A DNA stretch of 64,000 nucleotides from Iphione sp. A-MEVVRFRX5 (GCA_976226885.1 OZ320321.1:54374001-54438000); one strand, 5' to 3'. Shown: positions 60,322 through 64,000, counted from the stretch's first letter. A program made the numbers and translations. Notes: generated by a model not told the origin, from the letters alone.

Positions 60322-60548
60322 CTGCAAGAGAACCTTGCTGTCGGTAACCATGTTAGGATATCACAAAACATGGATCTTTATAATGAAATGGAAGTAGGGC
60401 TATAAATGAAACATTATTGACAGGCGGAAAATTTCTCGAGTTGGTCCGCTTAAATTGGACTTCCTGAATTGAAGGCCATATTTTCTGGGTAGCCTCCCCA
60501 TAGAAGAAAATTCCCCAAACGAAAATCCGCTGGTTTGCTATAACTTAC

Positions 60549-60773
60549 AGGTCTGGACACACTCTTTGCACATCATGGTGATGAGACGTGAGTGGCTGGC
60601 GATCTTCTCGGCGGTTTTGATGGCCTCGTCTACCACCTGGTCGGCTGGGAACACCTTGCTTACCAGACCAGCCGACTCGGCCTCTTGAGCAGTAATTCTA
60701 TTACCGGTCAGCACCATCTCCATCGCCTTGGATTTTCCCACGGCCTTCGTCAGCCTCTGAGTGCCTCCAGAAC
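60549..60773 (-). CDS. ECHS1: Enoyl-CoA hydratase (crotonase) exon ([24 protein letters not shown]...CKECVQT)
   Basis: Signature GGTQRL.(R/K)[13 protein letters not shown]; CAG acceptor and T|GTAAGT donor on the minus strand. Confidence 0.96.
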
Positions 60774-61282
60774 CTGTGCACGGATAAAGTATCCATTATT
60801 GTACAGTTTCTTAAAGTTGGATCTTTTACGAACATTAATGTCGATCTTCTGGGCATTCCAGTGATAGGGTGAGAGGAAGCAACAAGTCCACGCAGCAGCT
60901 GTACACGCAGCCTCGGTCAAGAAGTAACTAAAACGGTCAGCGCCAAATTTGCATGTTTACATGAGATGAAAAGTATGATACAATACGTCCAGGTACAGTG
61001 TTCGTGTACAAGTAATATAATCAATGACGCTAATTGGATGCAATAGACAACTGGTAGGTAATACACAGTTGTTTTATTTTTCAGAAATATCAAAACACAT
61101 GAGATGAACAACCGATTTCTGCGCAAGAACAAACATTCTACTGGAAGAATGCTCATCTGACTAGTTTTCGCTATGATATTATACAAAGGGAACAAGTACA
61201 ATTTTTTTTCTATATTGCTTCTGACATACGCGTCTTAGGGGTATGGGTGAAAGGTCGTGCTTGTGCCGCGCTCCGCGACTAA

Positions 61283-62897
61283 ATGTCAAAATTACACATA
61301 ATGGCAAGGTGTAAAAGGACTAAACAGCCCAAATCGAAAGACAAGGAGTTGGAGCATCTGACGAGAATGTCAAATCACACTGGAAATAAGGTTTCACTCA
61401 AACTAGGAGCCAAATCAGTGGATCTAACTGCCGGAAAATTTGAAAACCGACCGTTAAACGGTAACAACGGGCGCCACCACCCATTATCACCCGCACTACC
61501 GGGAGACGAGGCTACCATGGGCGGTAGAGAACACTTGGACAACCGCACGGGGTCTGACATGGTACCAGACAAAGCTCAAGGTAATGACGATAATCAATCT
61601 CACCTGAACAGAATTGCATCAGAAATATTTGACAATGAAATATTCATTCTCATAGAGGTTGAAAAAATCAAAAACATTACTGACTCAGCCATTAAAAGTC
61701 ATGAGGTGACCATCAAACATCTATTGCAGGACAACCTGGCACTAACACAAAAACTAAAAGACATGACGGTAAGAATTAATGAGCTGGAGGAGAGGATCTC
61801 AAAATTAAAATGTGATGAGTTAAAACCACAAACTGAGGAGAGAGAACCACCTTTCCACAACACTAACATCTTAAACCACAACTCCGCTCAAGACGAACAT
61901 CAATCACAAAATGCCCATCAGGACACTCTGTTGCAACATCAAGACACTCTGTCGCAACAGACGTATGACCGTAGGAAAAATATCATTGAATCGGGTCTCC
62001 CTGATAGTCCCAAATACAATCTCAAGGAGGCTATATATGACATATGTAACTCAATTGACTCAGGAGTGACTGAATGTGACATAAGGTCAATTGACTGGAT
62101 AGGTAGATATCAGCATGGTAAAGAGAGGTTAGTCAAGGTTGAATTCTACACCGTCACATCCAGGAACAAAATCTACTCAAAAAGACACAAGCTAAAGAAC
62201 TTGCAGGAATACGCCTTTATTTTTCTTAGAGAGGATATTCAAAGAGAGGCCAGACAAATCTATCACAACCTGCAGGAAATAGCCAACTATGCCAGGAAAG
62301 AAGGCCTGAAAGCAGGAGTAGTGGGATTGTCACTTCGCATAGAGGGAAAGCTGTACAACCACAACATGCTGCAAGACCTCCCGCATGGATTAACACTTGA
62401 AAAGGCAAACACTATAGAAAACAAAGAGATATTTGCATACAGAGGTGCAGCATGCTTGTTGTCGACGCTACACCCTACCCCTGTGACCATATATGGTGAA
62501 ACGCATAGGACTGCTGAGCATGCGCTACAGGTAACAAAGGCGAATGTATGCAACGACACACTGGCAGCGCGAAAAATCAAACAGACGGTTGACCCAGTCC
62601 AAGCGAGACGCTTTGGTGACTCAGTACATACAACGGAGCATTGGGAGAGCGTGGAAAAGGACACACTGTATCAGATACTGCTTGAAAGGAACAGACAGCA
62701 TAAGGAAACAGATCTCTGCCTAAAGCAAACTAAAGGTAAGAAAATCGTAGAAGTATCACCTCACAATACCTATGGTAGTGCCTGCCGTCTTGATGACATT
62801 TCCCTATCGGTGGGCAACTAACTATCTTGGCAGGAACTATGTGGGTGAAACACTTACCATACTACGAGGCAACTCTACCCTTGTACACACTGAATAA
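61283..62897 (+). CDS. LINE ORF1: coiled coil, RRM-like region and C-terminal NADAR/YbiA-like domain; +1 frameshift near 62810
   Basis: Heptads LTQKLKDMTVRINELEERISKL; RRKNII.SGLP...IG...VKVEF...IFLREDI ORF1 pattern; NADAR-like LLSTLHPTPV.IYG..H.TAEHALQVTKA...IVEVSP. After the TAA at 62819 the +1 frame supplies NYLGRNYVGETLTILR up to TAA 62895. Confidence 0.75.
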
Positions 62898-62950
62898 CAT
62901 TTTGTGCCCACAAACATTCACAGTCTCTTGTGTATCATATTTACAGGCCC

Positions 62951-63564
62951 ATGATGCCCACAAGAGTAAGGTTCATTACCAACAATCGAGGCCAGGAGTT
63001 CAGCAGAACGGTTGAACACTGCATAGGAGATAGGTTCGACTGGACGACAATGATCATCCCTCAGGCGAAGTATGAGGACCTGGTTGCTATGCTGGATAAC
63101 ATGCCCATACTTGGGATCGATATTACCCTTATTTATTTAGGTTTTTATGATATGGTCCAATACACACATATGGGCCTAAAACCAAGGTACACTACCATGC
63201 TGGGACTTGATCACGACTTGTGGGAAAATATGTCAACGATTGTAAATGCTCTGTTTCAGCCCTATACCACCCAGTTGTTTTCTTACCTGTGCATGGAATA
63301 TCAATTGGTGACTCTCACCCCAGGGATCAAAGTGACTTGAACAAACATTTTGCGATCCACAACTGCCTAGTGGAGGCGATGAATAATCGGAACGGGGTGA
63401 GCATGCCAGACACTGCCTCACCAGTCAACGAAATCATAGGGCATCACACTGTATTTAACGGTGAACTGATCAACGAGGATGATGAGGTGCACAGCCACGT
63501 AGTTGACATGTGGCTTGAACAAATTGAAGTGTTCCTCATTGACAATTATTGCTACAAGTATTGA
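62951..63564 (+). CDS. Intermediate LINE ORF, degenerate SGNH/GDSL esterase-like fold; one frameshift near 63265
   Basis: Joining ORFs 62930 and 63220 gives spacing like SGNH blocks (RVRFITNNRG / IIPQAKYEDL / ITLIYLGFYDM / LINEDDEVH...MWLEQI), but the catalytic residues are not canonical. Confidence 0.45.
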
Positions 63565-63628
63565 TATATCTGTCTACTGTAATGATATCCTTATCAACAT
63601 CATCAATTTTGTGTAAGAAAAGGGTGCA

Positions 63629-64000
63629 ATGAAATTTGTAATACAGCACTTTAATGTTCAAAGCATATTTAAAAAGTTAAAAATTGTTCATGATGACATT
63701 ATTCAGTCGAATTCTGTAATAACCTGCTTCACTGAGACTTGGCTAAGAAATAGTATTAATGATTCCTCACTCATAATGCACGGATATCATATTCTTCGAC
63801 AAGATCGAGCTTCAAATAAAAAATTAATGGGAGGGGGTATACTCGTCTATGTCAAGAATGACTGCACTATCAGGAGTGTTGATGAACTGTCTATCAACTG
63901 TGATCTATTTGAATGTCTAGCTTTTAGGTTAACATGTAGAAAATTTAAATCATTCATAGTGATTGTACTATACAGACCGCCAGATGGCTCGGTCAATGCC
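63629..64000 (+). CDS. LINE ORF2 N-terminus, APE-type endonuclease (open to the window end)
   Basis: My translation: MKFVIQHFNVQSI...CFTETWL...GYHILRQDR...GGGILVYVK...VLYRPPDG, the hallmark CR1/L2 endonuclease motifs. Missing from the ORF track because it has no stop. Confidence 0.93.
   Translation, partial: MKFVIQHFNVQSIFKKLKIVHDDIIQSNSVITCFTETWLRNSINDSSLIMHGYHILRQDRASNKKLMGGGILVYVKNDCTIRSVDELSINCDLFECLAFRLTCRKFKSFIVIVLYRPPDGSVNA

What the first reader, a model, noticed from the sequence alone, without database searches (positions are those of the whole stretch)
62429..62897. LINE ORF1 carries a C-terminal NADAR (YbiA-like) domain
Seen: the last ~130 aa of the 512-aa ORF1 read IFAYRGAACLLSTLHPTPVTIYGETHRTAEHALQVTKANVCNDTLAARKIKQTVDPVQARRFGDSV...WESVEKDTLYQILLERNRQH...LKQTKGKKIVEVSPHNTYG, and the +1 frame continues NYLGRNYVGETLTILR. 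In order and spacing this follows the NADAR consensus (FLSNFY..P..IDG..Y.TSEHYYQAQKA...P..AKKLGR...W...K...M......KF.QN..L...L..T....LVEASP.D..WG...G.N.LG..LM.VR). Established: NADAR proteins are N-glycosidases. YbiA and relatives act on riboflavin-pathway intermediates, and DarT1-associated NADARs remove ADP-ribose from guanine in DNA. Guanine ADP-ribosyltransferases occur in animals (pierisin, clam CARP-1). Recognised CR1/L2 ORF1 modules are coiled coil, RRM, PHD, CCHC and esterase; I know of no NADAR among them. Inference: the retrotransposon RNP may carry an eraser of nucleic-acid or protein ADP-ribosylation, a possible counter-defence, or a repurposed nucleotide-binding module.
Basis: partly seen in the sequence, partly recalled or inferred. 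Interest (0 to 1): 0.9.

Follow-up and report, generated by a model that had tools for sequence, protein, structure and literature searches.

The report
LINE ORF1 protein ending in NADAR
A decayed copy of a jumping gene (a LINE) encodes an RNA-coating protein that ends in a NADAR enzyme domain. The same fusion is kept by hundreds of diverged LINE families in invertebrates. These elements therefore probably carry their own remover of ADP-ribose marks on RNA or DNA, an idea mentioned once in print and never tested.

Summary
Window 62429-62818 is a NADAR domain (Pfam PF08719, 51-55 bits, cut-off 35.1) at the C-terminus of a 512-aa LINE ORF1. A frame break at about 62819-62822 puts its last ~25 residues in the +1 frame.

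- **Architecture.** ORF1 is an L1-type ORF1p (coiled coil, RRM, CTD) with NADAR appended. It is followed by a separate ~200-aa SGNH-fold ORF, broken here, and then an APE-RT ORF2.
- **LINE clade.** The ORF2 and the 3' ends (conserved block plus 4-5-nt microsatellite tails) look CR1/L2-like, not L1/Tx1.
- **Spread.** The genome holds at least 151 NADAR-ORF1 matches (2455 candidates), about 64 of them in open frames of 490 aa or more. In public data, 146 of the 150 best 50%-identity clusters share the RRM-CTD-NADAR order.
- **Conservation.** The three residues shown by mutagenesis to drive NADAR catalysis (Glu, Lys, last-strand Glu) are invariant or nearly so here and about 92-99% conserved across the family. 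dN/dS is 0.1-0.25.
- **Caveat.** Several ADP-ribose-contacting residues are changed in this genome's lineage.
- **Novelty.** It is limited. PMC12477816 (2025) notes NADAR in oyster LINE ORF1s in one sentence, and this scan has flagged the family many times in this genome.

Function is untested.

The parts
61250..64000 (+). Decayed LINE copy. The 5' end is approximate and the element runs off the window end. It finishes about 4.2 kb further on at an (AATC)n tail (L031 8150-8182).
   Evidence: Homology to the closest copy (L002) begins about 30-40 nt before the first ATG. The ORF2 end, 3' block and tail are in L031.
61283..62821 (+). ORF1, 512 aa including the stop codon. The start conserved among copies is the second ATG at 61301.
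61682..61828 (+). Probable coiled coil of ORF1p (aa 134-182).
   Evidence: Weak Pfam hits to coiled-coil families only. The segment is conserved with dN/dS 0.07-0.18. The coil itself is inferred.
61946..62428 (+). RRM plus CTD of L1-type (type II) ORF1p.
   Evidence: The AF2 model of the homologous region (pLDDT 90) matches human LINE-1 ORF1p RRM-CTD (2yko, 2ldy, 2w7a; probability 1.00).
62429..62818 (+). NADAR domain, in-frame part (aa 383-512). The catalytic-equivalent codons are Glu412 at 62516-62518, Lys419 at 62537-62539 and Glu490 at 62750-62752.
   Evidence: Pfam PF08719. Foldseek matches 8bau and 2b3w.
62819..62897 (+). Frame break at about 62819-62822, then the last helix of NADAR (G-x-N-x-x-G...R motif) read in the +1 frame up to a stop at 62895-62897.
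62954..63564 (+). Separate middle ORF of about 203 aa with an SGNH/GDSL-hydrolase fold. The nucleophile position is not conserved, so it looks like a pseudo-esterase. It is broken here by a frame shift at about 63266-63268.
   Evidence: The start and end are conserved in at least 22 of the 29 short loci (L002-L030). AF2 gives pLDDT 87. Foldseek to GDSL lipases gives TM 0.65-0.70.
63629..64000 (+). Start of ORF2 (AP-endonuclease domain), cut off by the window end. The RT lies beyond and is fragmented in this copy.
   Evidence: Pfam PF14529, PF03372 and PF00078 on L031 fragments.

Best explanation
Shown: this is a broken copy of a three-ORF LINE of CR1/L2 type. Its ORF1 protein is an L1-like RNA-coating protein (coiled coil, RRM, CTD) with a YbiA-type NADAR N-glycosidase domain fused to its C-terminus. 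The fusion is ancestral to a very large LINE radiation and is kept by purifying selection, with the catalytic Glu/Lys/Glu intact.

Inferred mechanism, about 45% likely: ORF1p trimers coat the element's RNA in cis, which places many NADAR active sites on the RNP. There they hydrolyse the N-glycosidic bond that links ADP-ribose (or a close ribosyl adduct) to guanine or cytosine in the single-stranded LINE RNA, the nascent cDNA or the nicked target DNA. Such adducts block polymerases. They are made by pierisin/CARP-1-type transferases, which occur in molluscs and other invertebrates and in their microbes. The domain would therefore act as a self-carried eraser that keeps the template copyable.
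For: - Domain identity: Pfam 51-69 bits. A profile hit to YbiA 2b3w gives E=1.9e-11. The AF2 model (pLDDT 90) matches P. nicotianae NADAR 8bau (E=4e-8, TM 0.69) and YbiA (TM 0.73), and its N-terminal half matches human L1 ORF1p.
- Not a chance capture: at least 151 matches in this genome, about 64 of them in open frames of 490 aa or more.
- Wide family: an exhaustive profile search finds 269 clusters at E<1e-30. Among the best 150, 146 have RRM-CTD followed by a C-terminal NADAR. In other assemblies these ORF1s sit upstream of APE-RT genes.
- Selection: NADAR dN/dS is 0.08-0.27, like the RRM, while the linker is about 0.5-1.7.
- Catalytic residues: the equivalents of E43, K50 and E125 of 8bau are required for guanine de-ADP-ribosylation (PMC11543638). 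They are invariant or nearly so in 16 copies here. Across 145 family representatives, Glu is kept in 144, Lys/Arg in 133 and Glu in 143.
- Chemistry precedent: NADARs of all subfamilies, including a sponge one, remove ADP-ribose from G and C in ssDNA and RNA.
- Possible opponents: CARP-1 homologues are mainly found in bivalves, per PMC12945103.
- Parallels: NADAR is also fused to RNA-virus replicases and giant-virus capping enzymes, and to Macro/ARH domains in bacteria.
Against: - There is no biochemical or expression evidence. No sequencing run could be listed.
- In this genome's lineage several ADP-ribose-contacting positions of 8bau differ. R79 is an invariant Asp. The Asp of the D..WG motif is an invariant His. 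W133 is Tyr. R93 is Glu. The Asn of the LSNFYP motif is lost, and Y84 has no counterpart. R79 is not conserved across the LINE family as a whole either. The substrate may therefore not be canonical ADP-ribose.
- No pierisin/enterotoxin-type transferase was found in this genome with PF01375. The controls were silent too, so this says little.
- Other follow-up notes of this scan report lineages whose NADAR has lost catalytic residues.
- The window's own copy is non-functional.
Confidence: 0.45

Rival explanations
1. The domain is an active N-glycosidase, but its substrate is not base-linked ADP-ribose. Candidates are another ribosylated or phosphoribosylated base or nucleotide, a damaged nucleotide, or an NAD-derived cap or metabolite met by the RNP.
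For: The catalytic Glu/Lys/Glu are kept, but residues that hold the adenosine-diphosphate part of ADP-ribose in 8bau are replaced. These are R79, R93, D130 and Y84. E. coli YbiA itself acts on riboflavin-pathway intermediates (cited in PMC11543638). Giant viruses fuse NADAR to mRNA capping enzymes.
Against: Every NADAR subfamily tested so far, YbiA included, removes ADP-ribose from guanine (PMC11125620, PMC11833690). The riboflavin-type equivalog model TIGR02464 is not met.
Confidence: 0.25
2. The domain is a pseudo-enzyme. It would be kept as a nucleotide- or nucleic-acid-binding or structural module of ORF1p, for example as an extension of the CTD RNA-binding surface, without catalysis.
For: This genome's lineage has diverged at several ligand-contact positions after a long stem branch. 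The neighbouring SGNH-fold ORF has lost its nucleophile position yet stays conserved. Other notes of the scan describe lineages with lost NADAR catalytic residues.
Against: The three residues needed for catalysis are invariant or nearly so here and 92-99% conserved across 145 deeply diverged representatives. That is hard to explain for a purely structural role.
Confidence: 0.2
3. The domain acts on ADP-ribosylated proteins or on free or poly-ADP-ribose made by PARPs at the nick that the LINE endonuclease creates. It would not act on modified bases.
For: Bacteria fuse NADAR with Macro and ARH domains.
Against: NADARs were inactive on phosphate-linked RNA ADP-ribosylation, and their shown activity is on base N-glycosidic links (PMC11833690). 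No NADAR activity on proteins is reported in the papers read.
Confidence: 0.07
4. The NADAR segment is a chance insertion or exon capture peculiar to this copy, or a host gene exon misread as part of a LINE.
For: None found.
Against: The same ORF1 layout recurs at least 151 times in this genome and in hundreds of clusters elsewhere, always upstream of APE-RT.
Confidence: 0.01

Closest known systems
NADAR-bearing ORF1 proteins of Crassostrea gigas LINE families in Repbase (labelled Tx1), noted in PMC12477816
   Same: A YbiA-type NADAR domain sits in the ORF1 protein of a mollusc LINE. That paper likewise leaves the role unclear, suggesting only processing of the RNA intermediates.
   Different: The paper gives one sentence, with no anatomy, selection analysis or residue analysis. 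Here the ORF2 and 3' end look CR1/L2-like, not L1/Tx1, and a separate SGNH-fold ORF is present. I could not read the Repbase entries, so whether they are the same lineage under another label is open.
Ectocarpus Gypsy LTR retrotransposons with NADAR at the N-terminus of Pol (PMC12477816)
   Same: A retrotransposon carries a conserved YbiA-family NADAR.
   Different: It is a different element class (LTR) and a different host protein (Pol, not the RNA-coating protein). It is probably an independent, bacterial-like acquisition.
Human LINE-1 ORF1p (PDB 2yko, 2ldy), type II ORF1
   Same: Coiled coil, RRM and CTD in the same order. The fold match has probability 1.00. Type II ORF1 is already known in CR1 and L2 clades (PMC4120745).
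   Different: L1 ORF1p ends after the CTD and has no enzymatic domain.
P. nicotianae NADAR (8bau) and E. coli YbiA (2b3w)
   Same: Same fold. Same Glu...Lys motif and last-strand Glu, which is the YbiA-family signature.
   Different: Those are free-standing enzymes. The LINE version in this genome replaces R79, D130, W133 and R93 and lacks Y84.
DarG1 NADAR antitoxins and phage T4-type orphan NADARs that neutralise DarT1 (PMC11543638, PMC11825919)
   Same: A NADAR is carried by one party in a genetic conflict to erase guanine ADP-ribosylation of its nucleic acid. This is the closest functional analogy for a counter-defence role.
   Different: Those systems are bacterial or phage and belong to other NADAR subfamilies (Asp or His in the last strand). 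Their transferase partner is known, whereas none is known here.
Esterase-type (type IV) ORF1 of vertebrate CR1/L2 LINEs (PMC4120745)
   Same: An SGNH-fold protein is encoded upstream of the APE-RT ORF of a CR1/L2-type LINE.
   Different: Here it is a separate second ORF in addition to a type II ORF1, and its nucleophile position is not conserved in this genome's lineage.

Membership tests
NADAR superfamily (Pfam PF08719) | Profile match above the curated cut-off | tested here: met
   The window copy scores 51.4-55.2 bits and an intact copy 69.2 bits, against a cut-off of 35.1.
NADAR superfamily (Pfam PF08719) | YbiA-like fold | tested here: met
   The AF2 model has pLDDT 90. Foldseek gives 8bau at E=4e-8 (TM 0.69) and 2b3w at TM 0.73. 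Many viral NADARs also match.
NADAR superfamily (Pfam PF08719) | Catalytic Glu and Lys of the E-x6-K motif (E43 and K50 of 8bau) | tested here: met
   Both are invariant in 16 copies here. Across 145 representatives, Glu is kept in 144 and Lys/Arg in 133.
NADAR superfamily (Pfam PF08719) | N-glycosidase or ADP-ribosyl-hydrolase activity | not testable with these tools
   This needs an enzyme assay.
YbiA subfamily of NADAR | Glutamate in the last beta-strand (Asp in BC4488/DarG1 and His in phage NADARs; PMC11125620) | tested here: met
   The E125 equivalent is Glu in 15 of 16 copies here and in 143 of 145 representatives.
Riboflavin-intermediate N-glycosidase (TIGR02464 equivalog domain) | Score above the NCBIfam cut-off of 73.7 bits | tested here: not met
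   Scores are 54.9-58.7 bits.
Full ADP-ribose binding site as in 8bau | R79, Y84, D86, R93, D130 and W133 contacts | tested here: not met
   In this genome's lineage R79 is Asp, the D130 position is His, W133 is Tyr, R93 is Glu and Y84 falls in a gap. W89 and G78 are kept.
Type II (L1-like) LINE ORF1p | Coiled coil, then RRM, then CTD | tested here: met
   The RRM-CTD fold matches 2yko, 2ldy and 2w7a. The coiled coil is supported only by weak coiled-coil family hits.
CR1/L2-type LINE (Jockey superfamily) | APE-RT ORF2 and a 3' end with a short tandem-repeat tail instead of poly(A) | tested here: met
   Pfam PF14529 plus PF00078. The tails are (AATC)n, (ATTCA)n or (ATTC)n after a conserved 3' block in six copies.
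CR1/L2-type LINE (Jockey superfamily) | Placement by RT phylogeny with reference elements | not tested
   No Repbase or Dfam reference set was on hand.
L1/Tx1 LINE group | ORF2 clearly closer to L1 ORF2p than to other RTs, and a poly(A) tail | tested here: not met
   For this genome's ORF2, L1 ORF2p is absent from the PDB hits while R2 scores about 40 bits. For a related element, L1 ORF2p scores only 45 bits against 38 for R2. There is no poly(A) tail.
SGNH/GDSL hydrolase (middle ORF) | Fold, and the catalytic Ser of block I | tested here: inconclusive
   The fold is met, with TM 0.65-0.70 to GDSL lipases. The Ser position is T/N/S/G/V among copies. There is no Pfam hit.

The most novel reading that the evidence does not exclude
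A whole radiation of invertebrate LINEs carries, on the protein that coats its RNA, an active eraser of base ADP-ribosylation. Often a partner SGNH-fold protein is present too. The eraser would be a counter-measure against host or microbial nucleic-acid ADP-ribosyltransferases of the pierisin/CARP-1 type. That would make nucleic-acid ADP-ribosylation a previously unrecognised layer of transposon control in animals.
Probability: 0.3. Interest if true: 0.85.

Novelty: new member of a known kind. Interest (0 to 1): 0.55.

Why it matters
LINE ORF1 proteins are thought of as RNA chaperones without enzymatic activity. Here is a conserved enzyme domain on ORF1p, kept through hundreds of diverged families with its catalytic residues intact. 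This suggests that these elements must chemically repair or unmark their own nucleic acid to replicate.

Animal NADARs have no known role, and base ADP-ribosylation of DNA and RNA in animals is barely explored. This family offers a direct, testable link between the two. It also parallels the way phages carry NADARs, and RNA viruses carry macrodomains, against ADP-ribosylating defences.

The specific copy in the window is only a fossil. The value lies in the family.

Tried and rejected
- Word-indexed protein searches with ORF1 and with a 44-sequence alignment returned only 1-2 hits. The candidate list was apparently swamped, so a blank there means nothing. The exhaustive profile search replaced them.
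- The ORF2 word search gave only generic names, so it did not help to place the clade.
Residue and selection statistics for this genome therefore rest on 16-17 copies.
- A search for pierisin/enterotoxin-type transferases (PF01375) in the genome found none. The tool's control genomes were silent too, so the result is uninformative.
- No sequencing run could be listed for 61283-63564. There is thus no expression evidence, and read laying was not used.
- A profile-profile comparison of this genome's middle ORF with the middle ORF of a related element from another assembly was not significant. Their homology is not shown by sequence. Only the fold of this genome's version was tested.
- The conserved 3' block does not form a supported stem-loop: -2.9 kcal/mol, and one compensatory change in a pair that another copy breaks.
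- The L1/Tx1 assignment was considered and rejected for this family.
- Direction of transfer between the LINE NADAR and the host multi-NADAR proteins could not be addressed, because the tree has no outgroup.
- Organism names for most related proteins could not be obtained.

Full report
**1. Observation**

- Window 61283-62821 (+) is a 512-aa ORF.
- Its last 130 aa (62429-62818) match Pfam NADAR PF08719 at E=1.3e-14 (55.2 bits). The whole ORF scores 51.4 bits against a cut-off of 35.1.
- The riboflavin-type model TIGR02464 scores 55-59 bits, below its cut-off of 73.7.
- The match stops at profile position 127 of 163 because the frame breaks at about 62819-62822. The +1 frame (62820-62894) carries the final NADAR helix with the G-x-N-x-x-G...R motif. 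That motif is in frame in 15 other copies.
- An intact copy covers profile positions 11-162 at 69.2 bits.

**2. Anatomy of the element**

I fetched the stretch that continues past the window end as L031.

*ORF1.*
- It has a basic N-terminus, a probable coiled coil (aa 134-182, weak coiled-coil family hits only) and a variable linker.
- A conserved module of about 160 aa follows, and then NADAR.
- An AlphaFold2 model of that module plus NADAR, built on 16 natural copies, has mean pLDDT 90.1 and pTM 0.77.
- In Foldseek against the PDB, its C-terminal half matches Phytophthora nicotianae NADAR with ADP-ribose (8bau, E=4e-8, TM 0.69) and E. coli YbiA (2b3w, TM 0.73).
- Its N-terminal half matches the RRM-CTD of human LINE-1 ORF1p (2yko, 2ldy, 2w7a; probability 1.00).
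- ORF1 is thus a type II, L1-like ORF1p with NADAR appended. Type II ORF1s are already known in CR1 and L2 clades (PMC4120745).

*Middle ORF.*
- A separate ORF of about 203 aa lies downstream, with a conserved start and a conserved end.
- It is intact in at least 22 of the 29 short loci (L002-L030).
- Its model (pLDDT 87) has an SGNH/GDSL-hydrolase fold, with TM 0.65-0.70.
- The position of the nucleophilic Ser is T/N/S/G/V among copies. In this genome's lineage it therefore looks like a pseudo-esterase.
- In the window it spans 62954-63564 and is broken at about 63266-63268.

*ORF2 and 3' end.*
- ORF2 (AP endonuclease plus RT) starts at 63629 and runs off the window. It is fragmented in this copy.
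- Six copies end with a conserved 3' sequence block followed by a 4-5-nt microsatellite tail: (AATC)n, (ATTCA)n or (ATTC)n.
- No stem-loop is supported in that block.

**3. Which kind of LINE**

- The ORF2 of this family does not hit human L1 ORF2p among solved structures at E<=0.01, while R2 proteins score about 40 bits.
- A related full-length ORF2 from another assembly hits L1 ORF2p at only 45 bits against 38 for R2.
- The endonuclease matches PF14529 better than PF03372.
- The tails are microsatellites, not poly(A).
- From my own knowledge, the RT motifs and the C-terminal W-N-x-L-P motif are typical of CR1/L2-like elements.
No RT phylogeny with reference elements could be run.

**4. Is the NADAR a stable part of the family?**

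Yes.

*In this genome.*
- There are at least 151 matches at 35-100% identity, out of 2455 first-look candidates.
- By my count of the listed rows, about 64 lie in open frames of 490 aa or more.

*Selection.*
- Pairwise dN/dS for the NADAR part is 0.08-0.27, like the RRM-CTD (0.04-0.16).
- The linker is about 0.5-1.7.
- Most pairs are saturated at synonymous sites. The best pair (dS 0.33-0.52) gives 0.21 for NADAR and 0.12 for the RRM.

*In public data.*
- An exhaustive profile search of 1.84 billion representatives finds 269 clusters at E<1e-30.
- Of the best 150, 146 have RRM-CTD followed by NADAR at the C-terminus, with a median of 8.5 residues after it. The other four are multi-NADAR proteins.
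- In three contigs of another assembly, NADAR-ORF1 lies upstream of APE-RT, once with a 208-aa ORF between them.
- Atlas searches point to annelid clusters with the same layout.
- They also point to an annelid cluster in which all members carry NADAR and some carry a GDSL lipase (38%) or CCHC knuckle (21%) domain.

*Tree.* In a tree of NADAR domains, this genome's 16 copies form one clade (support 100/99) on a long stem inside the LINE radiation. The multi-NADAR proteins form a separate clade. The tree has no outgroup.

**5. Is it likely to be an enzyme?**

- Schuller et al. (PMC11543638) showed by mutagenesis that guanine de-ADP-ribosylation needs three residues. These are the Glu and Lys of the E-x6-K motif (E43 and K50 in 8bau) and the acidic residue of the last strand (E125).
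- HMMER alignments to 8bau and 2b3w place these at Glu412, Lys419 and Glu490 of the window's ORF1.
- In 16 copies here, the E43 and K50 equivalents are invariant and the last-strand Glu is kept in 15 of 16.
- Across 145 representatives, Glu is kept in 144, Lys/Arg in 133 and Glu in 143. W89 is kept in 142.
- The last-strand Glu is the YbiA-family signature (PMC11125620).

*Against a canonical ADP-ribose pocket.*

| Position in 8bau | State in this genome's lineage |
|---|---|
| R79 | invariant Asp |
| Asp of D..WG | invariant His |
| W133 | Tyr |
| R93 | Glu |
| Asn of LSNFYP | lost |
| Y84 | falls in a gap |

- The wider family keeps LSNFYP and mostly D..WG, but not R79.
- Catalysis is therefore probably retained, while the substrate, or the way it is held, may differ.
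- Other follow-up notes of this scan report lineages with lost catalytic residues. That is not the case for the copies I analysed.

**6. Mechanism**

- NADARs of all four subfamilies remove ADP-ribose from guanine in ssDNA and RNA, and some remove it from cytosine.
- An animal (sponge) NADAR does so too (PMC11125620, PMC11833690, PMC12945103).
- They do not act on phosphate-linked ADP-ribose.
- CARP-1-type guanine ADP-ribosyltransferases are found mainly in bivalves, and also in cnidarians and sponges (PMC12945103).
- Phages carry orphan NADARs against DarT1 (PMC11825919, title and abstract).
- NADAR folds occur in replicase polyproteins of invertebrate RNA viruses and in giant-virus capping enzymes.
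- My best reading is that ORF1p brings many NADAR sites onto the LINE RNP, where they clear base-linked ADP-ribose, or a related adduct, from the RNA template, cDNA or target strand.
- This is inference. I give it about 45%.
- The rivals are another N-glycoside substrate (25%), a non-catalytic module (20%), protein or poly-ADP-ribose (7%) and chance capture (refuted).

**7. Comparison with the literature, and novelty**

- The ORF1 module survey of the Jockey superfamily lists coiled coil, RRM, CTD, PHD, CCHC, esterase and zinc finger/leucine zipper, but no NADAR (PMC4120745).
- PMC12477816 (2025) reports NADAR in Ectocarpus Gypsy Pol. It adds that ORF1 proteins of several Crassostrea gigas LINE families in Repbase (labelled Tx1) also appear to hold YbiA-type NADAR domains.
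- It was the only paper in the library with the words NADAR, ORF1 and LINE that concerns transposons.
- The architecture is therefore catalogued and mentioned once, but not analysed.
- This scan has also flagged the same family many times on other DNA of this genome. There are 235 notes with the word NADAR, several of them followed up.
- I rate it a new member of a known kind. Its function is untested and potentially important.

**8. State of the window's copy**

- All three ORFs are broken: ORF1 at its very end, the middle ORF once, and ORF2 several times.
- ORF2 also holds about 1.6-2 kb of extra sequence beyond the window, including a C2H2 zinc-finger-like ORF.
- The copy lies next to an enoyl-CoA hydratase exon on the other strand.

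**Limits**

Only natural copies were used.
- There are no expression data.

Noticed in passing
window 62954-63564 (+): A separate middle ORF of about 203 aa lies between ORF1 and ORF2, with a conserved start and end in most copies. It has an SGNH/GDSL-hydrolase fold (TM 0.65-0.70). Its nucleophile position varies (T/N/S/G/V), so it is probably a pseudo-esterase. It is broken here at about 63266-63268. This is already the subject of another note on this window (s1-325210).
   Followed up: yes
L031 8088-8182; L032 6035-6128; L033 5871-5964; L034 6010-6101; L035 6010-6102; L036 6228-6318: A conserved 3' UTR block (GGAAGAGCTCC ... GACAATAAA) sits directly before a 4-5-nt microsatellite tail in six copies that are otherwise about 40% diverged at the protein level. 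RNAalifold gives no supported stem-loop. It may be the RT recognition site.
   Followed up: partly
P0002 / P0153 (Haliotis rufescens XP_048255699.1 and isoforms); also P0003, P0109, P0136: These are giant uncharacterised proteins with 5-8 canonical NADAR domains of about 100 bits each. In the abalone protein the domains recur every 642 aa. They form a clade separate from the LINE NADARs. They may be real host genes or merged gene models. Their role is unknown.
   Followed up: partly
L031 5830-7500 (beyond the window end, inside ORF2 of this copy): This copy is about 1.6-2 kb longer than the other full-length copies. The extra stretch holds a 113-aa ORF with a C2H2 zinc finger (27 bits) and a 287-aa ORF without Pfam hits. 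It is probably a secondary insertion.
   Followed up: no
window 60541-60741 (-): An exon of an enoyl-CoA hydratase/isomerase gene (Pfam ECH_1, 63.7 bits) lies about 500 bp upstream of the LINE on the opposite strand. The LINE therefore sits in or beside a host gene.
   Followed up: partly
L010 (G000:C15:12.81 Mb) and L013 (G000:C10:7.48 Mb): Two copies on different chromosomes differ by only dS 0.01-0.05 across ORF1 and share the same ORF1 length. At least one subfamily therefore moved recently.
   Followed up: no
L039 7001-11800: In another assembly (ENA ERZ25767047), two identical-length (664 aa) NADAR-ORF1 genes lie in tandem upstream of one APE-RT gene. This may be a tandem element or a duplicated ORF1.
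   Followed up: no
Atlas cluster, row 9: An annelid protein cluster in which all members carry NADAR, 38% a GDSL lipase domain and 21% a CCHC knuckle. NADAR and the esterase fold may therefore also travel together in other LINE lineages.
   Followed up: no
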